DNA of 64,000 nucleotides from Sminthopsis crassicaudata (taxonomy: Eukaryota), in assembly GCF_048593235.1 (NCBI RefSeq), contig NC_133622.1, forward strand, positions 189,689,198 to 189,753,197. Reading direction: 5' to 3'. Positions 9,526-19,479 of this stretch are shown one piece after another. Each line of letters starts with the position of its first letter. The first letter of the stretch is position 1. The notes beneath the pieces are model-generated. The model made no database searches, was not told where the DNA came from, and saw only the letters and a program-made list of their open reading frames with translations. Made by a program: the position numbers and the translations under genes.

Positions 9526-10140
9526 TATAGACGTATCCCACCATCTAACACAATTCCCTGTACTTAACAGGTGTTTAATAAATGTTGGTTGAATAAATGA
9601 AGAAACCAAGATCCAGAAAATGAAATAGATCTGTCCAAGGCAATGTAGCCATTAAGTAGCAGGGCTAAGTCTAGTAGTACCCAAATCTCTTGCTTCTCAA
9701 ATTGATGTTTCTCAGCCTTATAGAAACATTTCCACAGGAGTATTAGCATGGCATAGTATATAGTGGAAGGCATATTGGCTCTGGAACCAGGAGACTGGGG
9801 ATCCCGGCCTCATGTTCATCACTTAATGCTTCTGTGATGTTGAGCATCATTGAGGAAACAATGGAGATGTGTACGGTGGATATGAGCAGGGCTGTAACAC
9901 AACCCCAATGAGAACTCCAAACAACTGGAACGAACACTATTATTGGAGATACATACAATGGAAAAAAAGAAGATAGGCTATCATGGGGAAAAAAACAAAG
10001 ATGGATAGCCTGGTTATTTTCTACTGGTGTTCTTTGAAATGTCAAGAGAAATCATTGAAGGTTCCCAGCAAGATGAGAACCTGAAGAGAGGGCAGGAGAA
10101 GGCTAAAGGATAAAATATTTGTTAAAAAAAAACAACAACA

Positions 10141-10520
10141 ATTTTTTTTAAATTATATATATATATATATATTTTATAATATTATCCCTTGTATTCATTT
10201 TTCCAAATTACCCCCCCTCCCTCTATTCCCTCCCCCCGACGACAGGCAATACCATACATTTTACATGTGTTACAATATAGTCTAGGTACAATACATGTGT
10301 GTGAATATCATTTTCTTGTTGCACAATAAACATTAGAATCCGAAGGTACATGCAACCTGGGCAGACAGATATTAGTGCTAACAATTTACATTCACTTCCC
10401 AGTGTTTCTTCTCTGGGTGTAGCTACCTCTGTCCATCATTGATCAACTGGAAGTGAGTTGGATCTTCTTTATGTTGAAGATTTCCACTTCCATCAGAATA
10501 CATCCTCATACAGTATTGTT
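10141..10520 (-). mobile_element. 5'-truncated young L1 (3'UTR) with TSD
   Basis: Poly-T head; aacaacaacaatttt is present on both flanks. Confidence 0.85.
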
Positions 10521-10589
10521 GAACAACAACAATTTTAATGTTCAAAACTTTGTTCTGAGAAATTTTAAAAAATATTTAAAAATTAAAGC

Positions 10590-13500
10590 AATTATTAAAG
10601 ATATTTTACCCAATTATATGCCAATAAATCTAACAATCTAAGTGAAATAGATGTTTGCAAAAAATCTAAATTGCTCAGATTAACAGAAGAGGAAATAAAA
10701 TACTTAAATAATCAAGTATAAGGGAAAAAAAATTTAAAAGCTATCAATGAATTTCCTAAGACATAATCCCCAGGACCAGATAAATTCACAAGAGCATTTT
10801 ACTAAACATTTAAAGAGCAATTAATTCCAATACTATATAAACTATTTAGAAAAATAGACACAGAAAGCAATCTATTAACTTACTTTTAGGGTGCAAATAA
10901 GATGCAAATAATGGTGCTAATACTTAAACCAGGAAGAGCTAAAACAGAGAAAGATAATTTTTACCAATTTCCCTAATGAATATTTATGCAAATTTAAAAA
11001 TAAAATACAACTAATGAAATTACAACAATATATCATAATGATCTCACACTATGACCAGGAATGCAGGGTGGTTCACTATTAGGAAAACTAATAGCATAAT
11101 TGACTCTAATAAATAACAAAATCAAGAGAAATAACATAATTACAGATAAAACTTTTGACAAAATACAACATTTATTCCTATTACAAAACACTGGAGAGTA
11201 TAGAAATAAATGGGACTTTTCTTAAAATGATAAGTAGGATCTTTCTAAAACCAGCAAGAAGTATTTTCTGCAATGGGGCTAAACAAGAAACTTTTCTAAT
11301 AAGACTAGAGTAAAGCAAGAATGCTCACTATCATCATTATTATTCAATTTTGCATTAGAAATTCTAGTTATAGCAATAAGAGGAGAAAAAGAAATTGAAG
11401 GAATTAGAAAGGCAAGGAGGAAGCAAAATTTCTATTCTTTGCAGATAATATAATAGATATACTTAGAAAATCATAGAGAATAAACTGAAAACTAGTTGAA
11501 ATCATTAACAACTTGGGTAAGGTTGCAGAATATAAAATAAGCTGACATATACTATCAGCATTTCTACATGTTACTAACAAAGTCTAGCAGCAAGGGAAAA
11601 AAGAGAAATTTAACTTAAAATAACTATAGATAATATACAATACTTAGGAATATGCTTGTCAGAACAAACCCAGGAACAATATGAGCACAATTGCAAAATA
11701 ATTTTCACATAAACTTTCTTTTTTTTTTTCAGTTTAATTTTTATTTTATTTTATAATTATAACATTTTTTTGACAGTACATATGCATGGGTAATTTTTTA
11801 CAACATTATCCCTTGCACTTACTTCTATTCAGATTTTTTCCCTTCCTCCCCCAACCCCCTCCCCCAGATGGCAAGCAGCCTTATATATGTTAAATATATT
11901 ACAGTATATTCTAGATACAATATATGTGTGTAGAACCGAATTTTTTGTTGCACAGGAAGAATTGGATTCAGAAGGTAAAAATAACAGTTTACATTCATTT
12001 CCCAGTGTTCCTTTTCTGGATGTAGCTGGTTCTGTCTATCATTAATCAATTGGAATTGGATTAGCTCTTCTCTATGTTGAAGAAATCCACTTCCATCAGC
12101 ATACATCCTCATACAGTATCATTTTTCATATAAACTTTCACAGAAAATAGAAAAATATTAATTGCTTATAGATAGGCCAAGCCAATATAATAACAATGGC
12201 AATTCTACCTAATTAGTTTTCTCAGTGCCATACCAATCAAACTACCAAAATTAGTTTATAGGCCTAAGAAAAAAATCATAAACAAAAACTCACCTGGAAG
12301 AACAAAAGGTCAAGAATGTCAAGGGAATCAATAAAAATAAATGGGAAAGAGGATGGCTTAGCTGTACCAGATCTCAATTCACAAACCAAGGTAGCAATCA
12401 TTGAAATAATCTTGTGCTGGCTAAGAAATGGATCAGTGTGATAGATTAGTTTACTCATTTATTTAATATTTTAAACAGTTACATTCAAAACAATTTTTTT
12501 TACATTTTTTTTTTTTTTATTTTGAGTTCTAGGTTCTCTCCTTTATCCCCTCCCCCACAATTTGGAGACCACATATGAAGTTATGCAAAACATTTCCATA
12601 AAAGTTAACATAGATCTCCCACCCTAATGAAAATAAAAGTTGGTAGATTAGTTTAAATATTCCATACACAGTAGCAAATGATCAGAGTAATCTGGTGTTT
12701 CATAAGTCCAAAGATTCAAGCTTTTGGAACAGAAAATCAGTATTAGGAAAACTGAAAATCAATTTGGCAGAAACCAGGTGTAAACCAACATCTCACACCA
12801 TTTGCCAAGATAACAACAAAATGAGTACATGATTAAACCACAAACAACTTAGAGAAATAGTTTATCTGTCAGAGCTTTGAATAAGGTAAGAATTTATGCT
12901 CAGTCAAGACAGAGTATTATGGGATGTAAAAGTAGATATTTTTGATTATATTAAATTAAAAAGGTTTTGCAGAAACTGAACCAATGCAGCCAAGATTTGA
13001 CAGAAAGTAAAAAACTGGGGAAATTTTTTTAATGGCAAGTTTTTCTGATAAAGACCTCATTTCTCAAATATATATGTAGAATCAAATCAAATTTATAAGG
13101 ATACAAGCCATTCCCCAAATGATAAATGGTCAAAGGATAAGAACAGGTAGTTTGCAGAAGTAGAAATCAGTTATAGTTATATAAAACTATTCTGTTTTTC
13201 TATTATATTTATATATAGAATATAAATATATTCTTTATTTATATAAAAATATAATCACTATTGATTAGAGGAATACAAATTAAAACAATTCTGAGGTATC
13301 ACCTCTCACCTATCAGATTGGCTAAAATAGCAGAAGAGGAAAATGACAAATGATGAAGAGGATGTGGAAAAACTGGGACACTAATGTAGTGAACTTCTCT
13401 AGCCATTCTGGAGATCAATTTGGAACTATACTCAAAAGGCTATAAAACTGTGCGTTCTCTTTGAACCAGCAATACTACTACTAAATATGTATACCAAATA

Positions 13501-14150
13501 GAGTTTTTATTTTTGTTTTTTAGGAAAGAAAAAGGAACTATATGTACAAAAATATTTATAACAGATCTTTTTGTGGTGGTAAATAATTTGAAATAGAGGG
13601 GATGTCCGTTAATTGGGGAATGGCTGAACAAGTTGTAGTATATGATTGTAATGGAATTTTGGTATGCTCTAAGAAATGACCAACAGGATGATTTCAGAAA
13701 AGCCTGAAAAGACTTACATGAACTGATGCAAACTGAAATGAACAGAGCTAGGAAAATATTGTACACAGTTACAGTAATATTGTACAATGATCAACTGTGA
13801 ATAATTTAGTTAATCTAAGTAATAGAATGACCTAAAACAACTCCTAAGAACTCATGATGAAAAATGCTGTCCACTTCCAGAGAAAGAACTAATAGAGTCT
13901 GAATGCCAATTGAAGCACACTTTTTTTTTTTAAACTTTCTTTACTTTTCTTGGGGTTTTTTTTGTCTGTTTCCCCCCACCCCCCACAACATGACTAATAT
14001 GTTTTTCATGTCTGCACTTGTATAACCTCTAAACATTCCTTTTCTTTTTAATCAGGGAGGTGGAGATTCTGGCAGGGAGGGAATTTGGAGCTCAAAGTTT
14101 AAAAAAAAAATGAATGTTTAAATTTTTATTTGTACTTGGAAAAGATTAAA
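10590..14150 (+). mobile_element. Old degraded L1 ORF2 plus 3'UTR, interrupted by younger insertions
   Basis: L1 ORF2 relic motifs (ccaggaccagataaattcacaag, ctctttgcagata, gaatataaaataa, aagccattccccaaatgataaatggtcaaagg); many stops. Confidence 0.9.
11720..12120 (-). mobile_element. Young 5'-truncated L1 nested in the old L1
   Basis: Same 3'UTR family as 10141-10520 and 56275-56648; flanks cacataaacttt / catataaacttt look like a TSD. Confidence 0.8.
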
Positions 14151-14231
14151 CTATTTGGATACATGTTTAAAATTTTTTTTTAACATTCTCCCCCCACCCC
14201 GTGCGCTGGTGCCCCCTCCCCCCCAAAAAAA

Positions 14232-14370
14232 GGGTTAAGTGACTTGTCCAATCACTGGCCGGAAGAGGAGTTTCTTTGCGTCAGGAAACAGGGAGAGAAG
14301 TGAAAGGAAAGCCTATTAAACCAGCTGCCAGAGAGGTGTGAACAAGAGGATGGCAGGGTCACACAGCTAG
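14232..14370 (+). mobile_element. MIR/CORE-SINE fragment split by a ~108-bp insertion copied from the CDK11-like CDS
   Basis: gggttaagtgacttgtcca [insert] gggtcacacagctag; the uninterrupted motif gggttaagtgacttgcccagggtcacacagct occurs many times elsewhere in the window; insert 14257-14358 matches 15186-15286 at about 91%. Confidence 0.8.
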
Positions 14371-14637
14371 GTAATATTCCTTTAAAAAAATTGAGTCCCA
14401 AATTCTTTCCCTTCTAGGGAAAATGCTTAGAAAACAATGAAAAGCTTAAGTCTGATCTCCTCACTCACTCTTTCCCCCTGCCCCCCGTGCTCCCTTTCCG
14501 TGCCCCTCCTCCCTTCTCCTTCCCGTCTTAGTCAGAGCACTTAGCTCACTTTACTCATTTCTCTTGGTTGCTTAGTTGGAGTAGCAGCAAAAGGCCGTGG
14601 CTCCGGCCAGTTTTTGGTTTAGCTCCAAAAATAAAAA

Positions 14638-16662
14638 ATGAGTAATCAAAAGAATTCTTGGAGAGTGAAAACTTTAGATGAAGTTCTTCAGGAGAAGAAG
14701 GGAAGGAAGGAACAAGAAAAAATGGACGAGGCTAAGGGCATGAAAAATTCCCACGATCTGGATTCCCTCCACGAGGAAGAACTGAGAGATCCCTGGGAGA
14801 CAAGATCCAGGAATTCCCTTCGCAGGAGGGAAGATGCCTCTTTGGCTGTCACACCTGCTCGGTCCACGTTACCAGAAACAAACTCTCTTCCCTGGACAAA
14901 GAAACGCCGATGCCGCGGTCATTCAGAAGAAGGTCGCAAGCGTGCCAGGATGGAAACGCGGGAGCGAGAAGCCGAGCGTCGGGCCCAGCTGGATGAAGTG
15001 CTTCCAGAATGGGAGAGGCGGAAAAGGAGGGAGAGGGCCCGAGAGCGTTATGGGAGGGAGAGCCATCCTGTGGAGGCGCCGCCCCAGAAGGGAGAGCGAG
15101 AGTGGACCATGAGGGAGCAGCAGCAGCAGCAAAGGGAACCGGAGCGGGAGAACCGGGAGGAGCAGGACAGGCGCAAAGAACCGGAGGCCGGAAGAGGAGT
15201 TTCTTTGCGTCAGGAAACGGGGACAGAAGTGAAAGGAAGCCTATTCAACCAGCCGCCGAAGAGGTGTGAACAAGGGGATGACAGGGAGCCGAGCAAAGAG
15301 GAGAAACTGGAAGAGAGGGATCTTCTTTCTGGTTTACACGATATAAATGACAGGGAGAGGACGCCCAGTTCAGCTGAGTCCTCCTCAGTAGAATCGGGAT
15401 GTGGCTCTGAGGAGGAAGAAGGGAACAGCTCAGAAGAGGAGGAGGACACAGGAAGCAATTCTGAGGAACTATCTGAGCAGTTTTCTGATAGTGTGAGTGA
15501 AGAGGAAGAGAAAGGAGGCCAAAGGTTAGTTGTTAGGGAGTCAATATTTGATCGACATTTCAGAGAGATGGAAGAAGTACTTCCGAGAGAACTTCACAAA
15601 AATGACTCCGACAGGAGGCCACAACTCAGTGGTCGAATACAAGGAGATGATGGCCCAGACAATCCAACAAATCCTACAGAGATGAAACGGGAGCCCCCCA
15701 CATGTTTTCCTGCCTTCCAGGGTTGTCGGAAACTGGATGAATTCCTGTGTCTGAACAGGATAAACGAGGGCAGATATGGTGTGGTATACAGAGCAAAGGA
15801 TAAAAAGACCCATGAAATTGTGGCTCTGAAAAAATTGAAAATGGAAAAGAAAAAAGACGGCTTCCCAATTAACTTCCTCAGGGAAATCAATATCATGCAG
15901 AAAGTTCAGCACCCCAATATTGTCGCTGTCCGGCAGATCGCGGTGGGCAGCCATTTGGACGAGATTTATATTGTAATGAATTACGTGGAGCAAGACCTCA
16001 GGAAGTTCATGAATACCATGAAGCGGCCCTTCCTGCCAGAGGAAGTGAAAACGCTGATGATTCAGCTCGTTCGGGGAGTGAAGTATCTCCATGACAACTG
16101 GATCCTTCATCGGGACCTCAAGCCTTGCAACTTGCTCCTCAGTAACTCGGGCATTTTAAAAATCGGTGATTTGGGGCTGGCCAGAAAATATGGCAACCCG
16201 AGAAAAGCCTACACTTCCGTGGTGGTGTCCCTGTGGTACCGGGCTCCCGAGTTGTTACTCGGAGCCCAGGAATATTCCACCGAGATAGACATGTGGTCAG
16301 TGGGCTGTATATTTGGAGAGCTCTTATCCAAGGCGCCTCTATTTCGAGGGAAATCAGAGATTGACCAGATCAACAAAATCTTTAAGAAGCTGGGAACTCC
16401 AACTGAGAAGATTTGGCCCGGTTACAATGACCTACCGGTAGTGAAGAACGTAACGTTTGAATATCAACCCTCTAATCAATTAGCGACAAGATTCGGGGCC
16501 CTTCTCTCTGACCGGGGCTTCGAACTGTTGAACGAGTTATTGATCTACGACCCCAGGAAGAGGATCAACGCACAAGACAGCCTGGCGCATGAATACTTCA
16601 GAGAAAGCCCACTTCCAATTGACCCCTTCATGTTTCCCATGTGGAGGCCCAAGATCGAGTAG
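14638..16662 (+). CDS. CDK11B: Intronless CDK11 (PITSLRE/CDC2L, p110-type) retrogene, 674 aa, probably an intact Ser/Thr kinase
   Basis: N-terminus [21 protein letters not shown] resembles CDK11 MGDEKDSWKVKTLDEILQEKK. RE-rich and poly-E regions are present. The kinase domain runs QGCR...[54 protein letters not shown]. One continuous ORF covers what is a ~20-exon parent gene, so this is a processed copy and not the parental locus. Confidence 0.93.
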
Positions 16663-16790
16663 AACAGTCTCACACGAGGCCTAGGGCTCCAGAAGGACTT
16701 GATCGTAGCCAGATTATAACGGGAGACCCAGGCCGCCATCTCACCGTCATCAACCAGGGAAATGTTCAGCTGGGCAGTTCACACAAACTT
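16663..16790 (+). pseudogene. Decayed remnant of the CDK11 C-terminal tail after the new stop
   Basis: In-frame *NSLTRG resembles QQRVKRG; then in a shifted frame PRAPEG-LDRSQ...HLTVINQG resembles PRPPEGGLGYSQ...HLTTTNQG. Confidence 0.75.
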
Positions 16791-17620
16791 CACACCAGGC
16801 CACAGAGCACAGGCAACCGGGAGGGAATTACAACCGGACCTAGCGAGGGGCACGGGGGACAGGCTGGGGTGGAGGGGCTGGAGGACAGGCCTCGGGGGTC
16901 CTTCTGCTCCCCCACGGGGCACGTGCAGCTGAGAAAGACAGAGGGGACGGAGGGGGACGCCCTGCAAACGTGAGAACGTGTGTGTGTTGTTATTTATTAC
17001 ATGATTTTACCAACTAGAGTTTTTCTGTTGACCCCTTTCTTCTGGACCCCAACGTGCTGGAGGTGGGGGGTGGGGGGAGATCCTTTGGGGGAGCCGGAGC
17101 CCGCCGTCCCTGCGGTCACCCCCGAGCGCCGGCCGCTCCCTCCCGCGCGGAGAGGCTGCTTACAAAGGCCCGAGTGTTGCGAATCAAGTCCGTTTTGTCT
17201 TCGCAGTAAAACTGGAGTCGAGGAAGGTTTTTTTCCCCTTTCCTGGAGACACCGTGCCCCGTTTCCAGCCCCGCGGGGACGGCGCGCGATCCCCGGGCCG
17301 CTGGTTGGGAAGCCCGAACAAAAGCGACTTTATTGTCCCTGGAGTAGAGGGTGGAAAGCGCCGGAGCTTTGGGGGGGGGGGAGGGGGCAGCTAGCCCGGT
17401 GCAAGATGAGCATGGGTGTCGGGACAAAAAACGGAGAATGCGGACTTTTCGGAGCGACGATCTGAGCAGTTTTTTGATGGAATGAGTGATGAGGAAGGAG
17501 ACCAGAGCTCTTCCCACCGTTAGACTCTCCCTCCCCGTCCGGCCCTTCCCTCTGCCCCATCCCCCCCCCCCCTCCTGGGCCCCTTGTCCCACCCTCGATC
17601 ACACCTCTTCTCCCTCCTCC
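16700..17620. promoter_or_regulatory. GC/CpG-rich island downstream of the retrogene
   Basis: Dense CpGs (cgcgcgg, ggcgcgcgatccccggg) against a CpG-depleted background; judged by eye. Confidence 0.6.
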
Positions 17621-19479
17621 CTACCCCTCCTCCCCAGCTCTCCCCTGGGCCCCATCTTGCCAGGCAGGAAACTTCAGATAGATTCACACTGATCGACTCT
17701 AGGAGGGAACGAGCTCTTCTCACGTTCCATTTACTGTTTTAAAGAGGGCAGTGCTACATTCTTTCGGTCTGTTCATTCATTGATTCACTTCATTATTCCT
17801 TTAGAGCTGGAGGGAGAAGCAGTCTGTGGTACGGAATAACATATAGGACAAGAAGCTGGGTTAGAATACCCTGTCCCACTGGTGCTTCCCACGGGGTCTT
17901 CCTGGATAAGTCATCTAACATCTCTGAGCCTCAGTTTGCTCATCTTTAAAAAGAGGGAAATGAACTTGATGGCTTTCAATTGATTATTTTCCAATCAGTT
18001 AACGTTTATGGCTCCCACCAGCGCTAGATCCTAGGAGAATTTTCTTTCCCCATTAGGTTTGGCTGGTGGGGACTATTTTTCTGTTCATATGTCCCACTGA
18101 CTAGAGTGTGGCAGATACTTATGAAATGATGGTGTTTATTTGTTTACCCTTTTTTTAATTTGTGAGAACTCCCAAGGAGAAATCTCCATTCACCAGTAGA
18201 ATGTGGCAGGTACTTAGTAAATGATTGTGAGTTGTTGTGGTTTTTAACCTATTTTTTATTTGTAGTGTTACCATATGGAACTCCCAAGGAGAAAACTTCC
18301 CCATTCAACAGAGTAGATCATCATCTTCTCCACAACAGAAGTTTTTTGTTTTTGTTTTTTTTTTCTTTTTCCAGTCGCCTGGGACACTGAGGCAAAGTTA
18401 CCTGTCCAGAGTCACACAACCTGTATGTGTCATAGATCCTTTGGCTCTCCACACAATGACACTGCCTGTCTTGATTGATTTTTCAGATTCATTTGATGCA
18501 AATGACTTGTATTTAGTTGTTTTCTTGTCCTTATCAGACTAACCTTCTTGAGAGCAGAGACTGTATTTTTACCTCCTCTCTTCTTCAGTTCTTTCCCCAT
18601 CCCACGAGGACTTTGGGCTAGATAGCTCTAAAGTTACTTCCAGCTCTAAACTGCAACTTGGTTCATGAAATGCATGTCTAATAATCAGAGCTGTAACTAT
18701 GATGGAGTGACTGGGGTTTTGATTCAGGGCTACTTCGGTAATTTGCCAGAAATAATTAGTTAAAATAGGGAACTACCAAAGTGAGCTCTCCATCTTCTCC
18801 CAAAGATTTATGTCGCTCTTTCCACATATCTGACAACTGAATTTGTCTTAAAAAATTGATTTGGGGACATATTTCATGCTGCTGTTGCATCTAGCATTTT
18901 AGGTTAGTGAGAGTTCGGATGGTAGAAACAGTCATGTGTCAGAGGAATTTTTAGAGAGGAGGGGAGCGAGTCTGTTCAAATATCCAAATCACATTTCTGA
19001 TAAATCAAGGCCTGACTGAAACACTAGGATTTGAGGCCTTGGTAAAGGGTCTAGCAAGATGCTTCCTATCAGAGGGCTGGGCTAAGGCTCATTCTACCAA
19101 GTTTGGGTTTTATCAGCTACTCATACTTTGTTTTCAATTGCCACTTCAGCTAATCAAGACAGGCCCATGAACTAACCTCAGTCCTTACTGCTAAATTATT
19201 TGAGCTCACTACATAATAAATGCTATTGTCTGGTGTAGTCCATTCAAATCATTTTGGTTAGGTCAAGTAAATCAACCATTCCCTAGTCTTCCTGGATTCC
19301 AGCCTGCATTGGCTATGCTGATGGGGAGAGGAGAGGAGACCTGGGCCTTCAAGCAGTTCAGAATCCGAAGATCTTGGCCACCGGGAGCTCACAAACTGGG
19401 GGAGACAGAGGAAGAACAACCCCATATGGAGGAATAAGTACTATGTGTCTGGCACTGTACTAAGCATTATTATTTTTTT

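What the first reader, a model, noticed from the sequence alone, without database searches (positions are those of the whole stretch)
14638..16662. Intact but fast-evolving CDK11 retrogene: candidate novel marsupial CDK
Seen: a single 2,025-bp ORF spans the whole p110-type protein from its first residues through the kinase domain, with no introns and no recognisable poly(A) tail or TSD, which suggests an old insertion. Knowledge: parental CDK11 has about 20 exons and its kinase domain is nearly invariant among vertebrates. By-eye comparison with remembered human CDK11B gives only about 70% identity in the kinase domain. The N-terminal half is far more diverged and carries several deletions, yet the frame is preserved throughout. 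Inference: this much divergence without any stop or frameshift implies selection on the protein, i.e. a functional lineage-specific paralogue, plausibly germline-expressed like many retrogenes.
Basis: partly seen in the sequence, partly recalled or inferred. Interest (0 to 1): 0.85.

Follow-up and report, generated by a model that had tools for sequence, protein, structure and literature searches.

The report
Old CDK11 retrogene, dead in devil
This is a real, intronless, transcribed copy of the splicing kinase gene CDK11 in a dasyurid marsupial; selection kept its reading frame open for a long time, but its protein now changes almost as fast as neutral DNA and the same gene is broken in the Tasmanian devil, so it is an ordinary, possibly fading, lineage-specific retrogene.

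Summary
Window 14638-16662(+) is one 674-codon ORF. It is intronless and collinear with CDK11B p110 from the first Met to just past the kinase domain. Identity to the marsupial parent is 74% in the kinase domain and about 53% in the N-terminal half.

Correction: the ORF is not the whole protein. A CAG->TAG nonsense change removed the last 52 residues, which in human CDK11 hold the auto-inhibitory pseudo-substrate.

The Tasmanian devil has the syntenic orthologue, and there it is dead: two in-frame stops and two frameshifts. No other marsupial orthologue appeared among annotated proteins.

Before the two species split, selection is clear. All of about 10 indels are in frame. The kinase domain diverged about three times less than the now untranslated tail.

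Since the split the picture is mixed. Amino-acid replacement is statistically neutral-like (omega 0.73 overall, 0.59 in the kinase domain, p about 0.05). The window lineage gained at least as many replacements as the devil pseudogene. Stops and frameshifts, however, are strongly depleted.

Four RNA runs hold 85-92% of the ORF's exact 31-mers, against 16-19% of the upstream flank in the three of them listed there.

Verdict: a genuine, expressed retrogene under weak or fading constraint, and a new member of a known kind.

The parts
14638..16662 (+). Intronless 674-codon ORF derived from CDK11 p110 mRNA (retrogene coding sequence, stop codon included)
   Evidence: ORF list; single tblastn HSP to wallaby CDK11B; human CDK11B is the best PDB match, E 3e-172
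14638..15705 (+). N-terminal p110-type region (basic, RE-rich and poly-E segments). About 53% identical to the parent, with about 10 in-frame indels
   Evidence: Four-way protein alignment; polarised counts
15757..16599 (+). Protein kinase domain (Pfam residues 374-654). Catalytic residues are kept. DFG is now DLG and PITSLRE is now PINFLRE
   Evidence: Pfam; residue map to human numbering
16660..16662 (+). Stop codon TAG, created from the parental CAG (equivalent to human Q744) and shared with the devil. It removes the pseudo-substrate tail
   Evidence: DNA alignment to the walrus CDS and the devil copy
16663..16795 (+). Untranslated relic of the parental C-terminal 52 codons. It is decaying: 5 indels in 153 nt and 44% mismatch at codon positions 1+2
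16796..17030 (+). Probable relic of the parental 3'UTR. The end is uncertain and no poly(A) is left
   Evidence: Only the length and a T-rich end motif resemble the walrus 3'UTR, and the similarity is weak (E 0.3)
14440..14637 (+). Upstream or 5'UTR-like segment conserved with the devil. The transcription start is unknown
   Evidence: Window-devil alignment. No homology to the walrus 5' flank beyond the start codon
14250..14358 (+). Insert of about 110 nt, specific to the window lineage, sitting inside a SINE core. It copies CDS nt 15186-15286 at 91% identity
   Evidence: the repeat finder D2/D4; blastn; the devil has the uninterrupted SINE core
17448..17497 (+). 50-nt fragment resembling CDS 15459-15508 (82%), lying in a GC-rich block downstream and also present in the devil

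Best explanation
A CDK11 p110 mRNA was reverse-transcribed and inserted at this autosomal site before the window species, an unnamed dasyurid about 8-9% diverged from the Tasmanian devil, split from the devil.

The copy became a real gene. For a long stem period selection kept the frame open and constrained the kinase domain. During that period a nonsense mutation cut off the C-terminal 52 residues, which in human CDK11 hold the auto-inhibitory pseudo-substrate (751-762) and the CHK2 site S752. The cyclin-binding PITSLRE helix, the DFG motif and residues of the pS752 pocket also changed.

The predicted product is a catalytically competent CDK11-like kinase that lacks this auto-regulation. It is transcribed in a restricted set of samples.

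Since the split, constraint on the amino-acid sequence has been weak. The devil copy has been lost. The window copy still has its frame protected, with no stop and no frameshift.

Shown here: retro-origin, synteny, the devil lesions, the substitution and indel statistics, and transcript presence at the k-mer level. Inferred: kinase activity, loss of auto-inhibition, and present-day function.
For: Retro-origin: one intronless HSP against a multi-exon parent.

Orthology: window 3433-26550 is collinear with devil locus L001 at 82-92% identity.

Stem selection: about 10 indels relative to the parent are all in frame. Mismatch at codon positions 1+2 against the parental CDS is 15% in the kinase domain and 28% in the N-terminal half, against 44% in the post-stop tail. 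All key catalytic residues are retained.

Selection on the frame after the split:
- About 9 stop-creating substitutions are expected over both lineages. Observed: 0 in the window and 1-2 in the devil. P(0 in the window lineage) is about 0.01.
- The ORF has 6 indels in 1973 nt, 4 of them in frame. The adjacent tail plus 3'UTR has 11 in 355 nt, and the flanks have 10-13 per kb.
- Only one indel, 15 nt and in frame, falls on the window lineage.

Kinase-domain omega is 0.59, against 1 at p about 0.05. Omega in the true frame is 0.61 against 0.86 and 0.87 in the two shifted frames.

Transcription: runs X1-X4 hold 0.85-0.92 of the ORF 31-mers. X2-X4 hold only 0.16-0.19 of the upstream flank; X1 is not among the runs listed for the flank. 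Runs X11 and X12 hold 0.00 of the ORF but 0.15 of the flank.

Against: The devil orthologue has 2 in-frame stops and 2 frameshifts, so the gene is dispensable in a close relative.

Overall terminal-branch omega is not significantly below 1 (ML 0.73, p 0.08-0.18). NG86 gives 0.61, at the 36th percentile of neutral simulations. Differences by codon position are 56/57/75.

The window lineage has more parent-polarised replacements (46) than the devil pseudogene (30). These include changes at otherwise invariant regulatory positions: T448R, S566C and P596S in human numbering.

ORF nucleotide divergence (9.3-9.5%) is no lower than that of the flanks (8.3%).

The exact protein is absent from a 15-billion-protein collection, so it is unannotated.

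No read-level data exist, so strand, transcript ends and tissue are unknown.

The ORF was picked because it is intact, which is an ascertainment bias.
Confidence: 0.6

Rival explanations
1. Retrogene at the start of decay. It was functional on the stem lineage, but constraint was lost around or before the dasyurid split. The devil copy has already broken. The window copy is a transcribed, not-yet-broken relic with no present protein function.
For: Terminal omega is indistinguishable from neutral. The window lineage has at least as many replacements as the devil pseudogene, 46 against 30. ORF divergence equals flank divergence. The devil copy carries disabling lesions. The ORF is unannotated. 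Retrocopies are often transcribed without having a function (general knowledge).
Against: Under neutrality since the split, P(no stop) is about 0.01. Between 4 and 12 indels per lineage are expected, 85% of them frameshifting, yet one in-frame indel is seen. The joint probability is about 4e-4 or less. Indel density jumps about tenfold immediately after the stop codon. The devil lineage also shows 3 of 5 indels in frame, which suggests that frame selection continued after the split. Kinase-domain omega is 0.59.
Confidence: 0.28
2. Rapidly adapting, neofunctionalised kinase. Omega near 1 is a mixture of purifying and positive selection on regulatory surfaces after the pseudo-substrate was lost. 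The gene would be a specialised, perhaps germline, deregulated CDK11 paralogue.
For: Window-lineage and shared changes cluster in regulatory elements. These are the G-loop T14-equivalent (T448R), the pS752 pocket (K524R, T565P, S566C), the T-loop SAP30BP contact and inhibitory site (S589N or D), P596S, and the PITSLRE helix (with PMC13324802). Polarised N:S is 46:7 in the window against 30:15 in the devil. The frame is protected. Transcription is restricted to some samples.
Against: No test gives omega significantly above 1. Synonymous polarisation rests on a saturated eutherian outgroup and is unreliable: the ML fit drove the window branch length to 0 in the kinase partition. Loss in the devil argues against an essential new role. 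The tissue is unknown.
Confidence: 0.1
3. The locus acts only as RNA, for example a regulatory or antisense transcript of parental CDK11, and the open frame is incidental.
For: Transcribed. Amino-acid replacement is neutral-like.
Against: An RNA-only role does not explain the depletion of stops and frameshifts confined to the ORF, nor the abrupt decay just after the stop codon. DNA identity to the parent is too low, about 75%, for extensive pairing.
Confidence: 0.02

Closest known systems
CDK11B / CDK11A (PITSLRE kinases, p110 isoform), the parental gene
   Same: It is collinear from the first Met to the end of the kinase domain. The kinase domain is 74% identical. Kept residues are the catalytic K467, E485, D562, K564, N567, D580, T-loop T595, gatekeeper M516, and the SAP30BP contacts W557 and Y587.
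   Different: It is intronless and lies at another locus. It lacks residues 744-795, which include the pseudo-substrate 751-762 and S752. PITSLRE is now PINFLRE and DFG is now DLG. K524R, T565P and S589N are changed; T448R, S566C and P596S are changed in the window lineage only. The N-terminal half is about 53% identical, with about 10 in-frame indels. It evolves roughly 10 or more times faster than the parent: wallaby and walrus parental kinase domains differ at only a handful of residues.
Tasmanian devil locus annotated 'LOW QUALITY PROTEIN: cyclin-dependent kinase 11B-like' (P0001) and the UniProt model P0351
   Same: It is the syntenic orthologue, with flanks 82-92% identical. It has the same start codon, the same TAG stop, and the same stem substitutions (DLG, PINF/MNF, K524R, T565P).
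   Different: The devil copy carries a TGA after a 45-nt deletion, a +1 frameshift, a TAG inside the kinase domain, and a -1 frameshift. Both annotation models skip these lesions. The window copy is intact.
Engineered CDK11 deltaC (pseudo-substrate deletion) of McGeoch et al. 2026, PMC13324802
   Same: Both lack the C-terminal auto-regulatory segment. In vitro the deltaC kinase is more active on SF3B1.
   Different: The retrogene truncation is natural and comes with many other substitutions, including changes in the cyclin-binding helix. Its activity and partners are untested.
Mammalian protein-coding retrogenes in general, often testis-biased with elevated dN/dS
   Same: It is an intronless copy of a multi-exon housekeeping gene. 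The ORF was kept for a long time, transcription is restricted, protein evolution is fast, and it was lost in one lineage.
   Different: Its expression site is unknown. No out-of-X movement is involved: the devil contig is 267 Mb, which from my own knowledge is far larger than the devil X, so the locus is probably autosomal.

Membership tests
CDK11 (PITSLRE) kinase subfamily | Closest sequence relatives are CDK11 rather than other CDKs | tested here: met
   PDB search gives CDK11B at 3e-172 and CDK2 at 2e-80. All top database hits are CDK11A or CDK11B.
CDK11 (PITSLRE) kinase subfamily | Complete protein kinase domain with catalytic Lys, alphaC Glu, HRD Asp, Mg-binding Asp and T-loop Thr | tested here: met
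   Pfam Pkinase at 374-654. K398, E416, D493, D511 and T526 are kept, equivalent to human K467, E485, D562, D580 and T595.
CDK11 (PITSLRE) kinase subfamily | PITSLRE motif in the cyclin-binding alphaC helix | tested here: not met
   The window has PINFLRE and the devil has PMNFVRE. T481N and S482F are shared derived changes.
CDK11 (PITSLRE) kinase subfamily | C-terminal pseudo-substrate segment (human 751-762) with S752 | tested here: not met
   It is removed by the CAG->TAG change at the Q744 equivalent. The relic downstream is out of the ORF. The feature is defined in PMC13324802.
CDK11 (PITSLRE) kinase subfamily | p110-type N-terminal extension (basic, RE-rich and poly-E regions) | tested here: met
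   It aligns to parental residues 1 to about 430 with about 53% identity. The segments are shortened but present.
CDK11 (PITSLRE) kinase subfamily | Binds cyclin L-SAP30BP and phosphorylates SF3B1 | not testable with these tools
   Only contact residues could be checked: W557 and Y587 are kept and S589 is changed.
Functional retrogene (expressed, selected retrocopy) | Intronless copy of a multi-exon parent at a new locus | tested here: met
   A single HSP. The parent is split over 15-38 kb. The flanks carry no recognisable protein domain.
Functional retrogene (expressed, selected retrocopy) | Poly(A) tail and target-site duplication | tested here: not met
   Neither is visible. This is expected for an old insertion and does not exclude retroposition.
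Functional retrogene (expressed, selected retrocopy) | Transcribed | tested here: met
   X1-X4 hold 0.85-0.92 of the ORF 31-mers. Flank background in RNA runs is 0.08-0.20, with X2-X4 at 0.16-0.19. Strand and transcript ends are unknown because read laying failed.
Functional retrogene (expressed, selected retrocopy) | Purifying selection on the coding sequence (dN/dS below 1) | tested here: inconclusive
   On the stem it is clearly present. On the terminal branches omega is 0.73 overall (not significant) and 0.59 in the kinase domain (p about 0.05), and NG86 equals the neutral simulation. Stops and frameshifts are depleted.
Functional retrogene (expressed, selected retrocopy) | Orthologues intact in related species | tested here: not met
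   The only orthologue found, in the devil, has 4 disabling lesions. No other marsupial orthologue appears among annotated proteins.
Processed pseudogene | Disabling stops or frameshifts relative to the parent | tested here: not met
   The window copy has none in 674 codons. The only truncating change is the shared terminal nonsense codon. The devil copy does meet this feature.

The most novel reading that the evidence does not exclude
Dasyurid marsupials evolved a private CDK11 paralogue that shed CDK11's auto-inhibitory pseudo-substrate and several inhibitory phosphosites (the T14 equivalent, S589 and S752) and remodelled its cyclin-binding helix. It would be a deregulated, tissue-restricted, spliceosome-activating kinase evolving under positive selection and retained in some dasyurids but discarded by the devil.
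Probability: 0.12. Interest if true: 0.7.

Novelty: new member of a known kind. Interest (0 to 1): 0.42.

Why it matters
If the gene is still functional, it is a natural experiment on CDK11 regulation. It is a kinase that lost the pseudo-substrate tail recently shown to restrain SF3B1 phosphorylation, and it carries matching changes in the pocket that receives that tail. It would also add a lineage-specific CDK to marsupials. If it is fading, it is a well-dated example of the death of a retrogene, intact in one dasyurid and broken in another. Either way it warns against two shortcuts. A long open frame and a raw dN/dS of 0.6 do not by themselves show protein-level constraint, because here the neutral expectation for that statistic is 0.65.

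Tried and rejected
1. Read laying. There is therefore no read-level coverage, strand, splice or transcript-end data. Expression rests on k-mer shares only.

2. Marsupial parental CDS DNA. Cluster look-ups of seven CDK11 clusters showed no marsupial other than the wallaby. Proteins derived from Logan assemblies (P0240-P0242, P0253) are eutherian-like or non-mammalian. I used the walrus CDS (L002) as the DNA outgroup and the wallaby protein as the amino-acid outgroup.

3. Naive NG86 dN/dS of 0.61, bootstrap 0.45-0.88. I rejected it as evidence of constraint, because neutral simulation with the flank substitution spectrum gives 0.65 (0.47-0.88).

4. Lineage-specific omega from the free three-branch model. 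It is unreliable, because synonymous sites are saturated against the walrus (ts about 7) and the fit put tw at 0 in the kinase partition. I therefore report only the models with equal terminal omega.

5. Dating from the tail divergence. The raw 44% mismatch implies an implausibly old insertion. GC and CpG decay and poor alignment of the last third inflate it, so I use it only as a relative control.

6. Long ORFs elsewhere in the window. None has a Pfam domain, so no host gene was identified.

7. Literature. I found no paper on a CDK11 retrogene.

8. Third protein search, with the kinase domain alone, to catch short orthologue fragments. It returned only the devil models.

Full report
**Observation**

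The window holds a single 674-codon ORF at 14638-16662(+). It stands in a GC-richer island (0.45-0.56) within AT-rich DNA. Pfam finds a complete protein kinase domain at residues 374-654. The best solved-structure match by far is human CDK11B (E 3e-172, against 2e-80 for CDK2).

tblastn with wallaby CDK11B (P0014, 780 aa) gives one uninterrupted HSP from 14638 to 16680. The parental gene, by contrast, is split into many coding blocks over 15.3 kb in walrus and spans 38 kb in wallaby. No poly(A) run or target-site duplication is visible.

Measured identity to the marsupial parent is 74% in the kinase domain (235/316). It is about 53% in the N-terminal half, which carries about 10 indels, all in frame.

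**Correction to the observation**

The ORF is not the whole p110. Its stop codon, TAG at 16660-16662, aligns with a parental CAG, the equivalent of human Q744. The next roughly 135 nt still align with the last 52 parental codons, but they are out of use and decaying. The devil has the same stop, so the truncation is older than the split of the two species.

**Orthologue and species**

The best database hit is a Tasmanian devil protein annotated 'LOW QUALITY PROTEIN: cyclin-dependent kinase 11B-like', with 79% identity. Its locus L001 is collinear with window 3433-26550 at 82-92% identity, so it is the syntenic orthologue. The window therefore comes from another dasyurid, about 8-9% diverged from the devil in neutral DNA.

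The devil copy is dead. Read from the shared ATG, it has four lesions:
- a TGA right after a 45-nt deletion;
- a +1 frameshift;
- a TAG inside the kinase domain (LDEI*IVMNY);
- a -1 frameshift.

The NCBI model and a UniProt model (P0351) both skip these lesions. Neither a full-length search nor a kinase-domain search found an orthologue in any other marsupial among annotated proteins. The window's exact protein is not in the 15-billion-sequence collection, so it is unannotated.

**Selection before the split (stem)**

All of about 10 indels relative to the parent are multiples of three. Only 15% of indels in the flanks are.

I compared codon positions 1+2 with the parental CDS at sites where wallaby and walrus agree. 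The mismatch is 15% in the kinase domain, 28% in the N-terminal half and 44% in the post-stop tail. The tail also has 5 indels in 153 nt. This is the internal control that an earlier first-reader note suggested (s1-192244), and it holds.

All catalytic residues are retained despite 25% replacement in the domain. The copy was therefore a functional gene for a long time. I did not attempt an absolute date, because the tail divergence is inflated by GC and CpG decay and by poor alignment.

**Selection since the split (terminal branches)**

Pairwise NG86 over 653 codons gives dN 0.090, dS 0.148 and omega 0.61 (0.45-0.88). The kinase domain gives 0.50 and the N-terminal half 0.68. This looks like constraint but is not.

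- I applied the context-dependent substitution spectrum of 13,228 aligned flank sites to the ORF. The neutral expectation for the same statistic is 0.65 (0.47-0.88), and the observed value sits at the 36th percentile.
- Reading the same alignment in the two wrong frames gives 0.86 and 0.87.
- Differences by codon position are 56/57/75.
- A three-branch GY94 likelihood model (window, devil, walrus parent) gives a common terminal omega of 0.73 overall (against 1, p about 0.08), 0.59 in the kinase domain (p about 0.05) and 0.86 in the N-terminal half. All are far above the third branch (p below 1e-5).
- Replacements polarised by the wallaby protein number 46 on the window lineage and 30 on the devil lineage; in the kinase domain the counts are 17 and 13.
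- ORF nucleotide divergence (9.3-9.5%) is not below flank divergence (8.3%).

At the amino-acid level, constraint since the split is therefore weak at best.

The reading frame is nevertheless protected.

- Neutral evolution predicts about 9 stop-creating substitutions over both lineages, or 4.3-4.6 per lineage. The window has none (P about 0.01) and the devil has 1-2.
- The window and devil copies differ by 6 indel events in 1973 ORF sites: 45, 3, 15 and 3 nt in frame, plus the two devil frameshifts.
- For comparison there are 11 indels in 355 sites of the adjacent tail plus 3'UTR, 4 in 277 sites of the 5' part, 17 in 615 sites of the GC-rich block, and 10-13 per kb in the general flanks.
- Only one indel, 15 nt and in frame, falls on the window lineage.
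- Even if the ORF were three times less indel-prone than the flanks, the joint chance of an intact frame after neutral drift since the split is about 4e-4.

Three of the five devil-lineage indels are also in frame. This suggests that frame selection continued in both lineages after the split and that the devil's loss is recent. Two caveats apply. Two of the 3-nt indels lie in triplet-repeat-like sequence. The ORF was also noticed precisely because it is intact.

**Expression**

Four RNA runs of one study (X1-X4, 650-850 Mb each) hold 0.85-0.92 of the exact 31-mers sampled from the ORF. Two small runs of another study hold 0.60 and 0.34. Many other RNA runs of the same organism hold 0.00.

As a control I searched the upstream flank 10000-14200. 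It is held at only 0.08-0.20 in all listed RNA runs, which is repeat background. That includes X2-X4 at 0.16-0.19, while runs X11 and X12 hold 0.15 of the flank and none of the ORF. X1 was not among the runs listed for the flank.

Parental CDK11 mRNA, at about 75% identity, cannot supply exact 31-mers. The ORF is therefore transcribed in a sample-restricted way.

**What the protein would be**

I mapped residues to human p110 numbering (window residue + 69 within the kinase domain).

Kept:
- K467, E485, the HRD D562, K564, N567, D580, T-loop T595;
- gatekeeper M516 and hinge N517 and V519;
- the SAP30BP contacts W557 and Y587.

Changed on the stem:
- PITSLRE to PINFLRE (T481N, S482F);
- DFG to DLG (F581L);
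- K524R, T565P and E445N.

Changed only in the window lineage: T448R (the T14-equivalent in the G-loop), S566C and P596S. S589 is N in the window and D in the devil.

McGeoch et al. 2026 (PMC13324802) report the following:
- Residues 751-762 are a pseudo-substrate that occludes the CDK11 active site.
- Deleting this segment raises activity on SF3B1.
- Phosphorylated S752 sits in a pocket formed by K524, K564 and S566.
- S589 contacts SAP30BP and is a candidate inhibitory phosphosite.

The retrogene thus encodes a natural deltaC CDK11 in which two of the three pocket residues have also changed. The reading that it is a catalytically competent, less auto-regulated CDK11-like kinase with a possibly altered cyclin interface is inference. 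This agrees with an earlier first-reader note (s1-192216).

**Verdict**

The most likely account (about 0.6) is a genuine, old, transcribed CDK11 retrogene. Its frame is still under selection in the window species, its protein is under weak or shifting constraint, and it has been lost in the Tasmanian devil.

The main rival (about 0.28) is that constraint has already ended and the window copy is an unbroken relic. An adaptive, neofunctionalised kinase is possible but unproven (about 0.1).

The locus is a new member of a known kind, the lineage-specific retrogene. It deserves much less than the 0.85 interest first assigned.

The scan has not reported this locus on other DNA. The three nearby notes are first-reader notes on this same window.

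Noticed in passing
window 14250-14358 (compare L001 9600-9650): An insert of about 110 nt copies the retrogene's own CDS (15186-15286, 91% identity). It sits in the middle of a SINE core about 280 nt upstream of the start codon. The devil has the uninterrupted SINE core, so the insert is specific to the window lineage. The junction shares a short CAGGG motif, which suggests a templated or microhomology-mediated event. Whether it affects the promoter is untested.
   Followed up: partly
window 17448-17497 (devil L001 12818-12883): A 50-66 nt fragment resembles CDS 15459-15524 (82-88%) and carries retrogene-specific residues (QF.DGMS). It lies about 800 nt downstream of the stop in a GC-rich block (17031-17650, GC about 0.60) and is present in both species. 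Its origin is unexplained.
   Followed up: partly
window 17031-17650: This GC-rich, CpG-rich block downstream of the retrocopy has a low substitution divergence from the devil (6.2%) but a very high indel density (17 in 615 nt). A UniProt devil gene model (P0351) splices from inside the ORF into this block. It could be a CpG-island promoter or an exon of another transcript.
   Followed up: no
window codon 289-291 (about 15500-15510): The Met that starts the IRES-driven p58 isoform in the parent (MSEDEE) is kept in the devil copy (GMSEEE) and in the downstream fragment (GMSDEE). It is Val in the window ORF (SVSEEE).
   Followed up: no
database hits P0007, P0017, P0023, P0026: Separate 'CDK11B-like' proteins of 743-764 aa are annotated in Peromyscus and Myotis species. 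They may be independent CDK11 duplicates or retrocopies in eutherians.
   Followed up: no
runs X5 and X26 (organism B): An RNA run (X5) of a second, coded organism holds 0.17 of the ORF 31-mers. X5 and X26 hold 0.11-0.12 of the flank 31-mers. This is compatible with a close relative, about 5% diverged, that also transcribes the locus.
   Followed up: no
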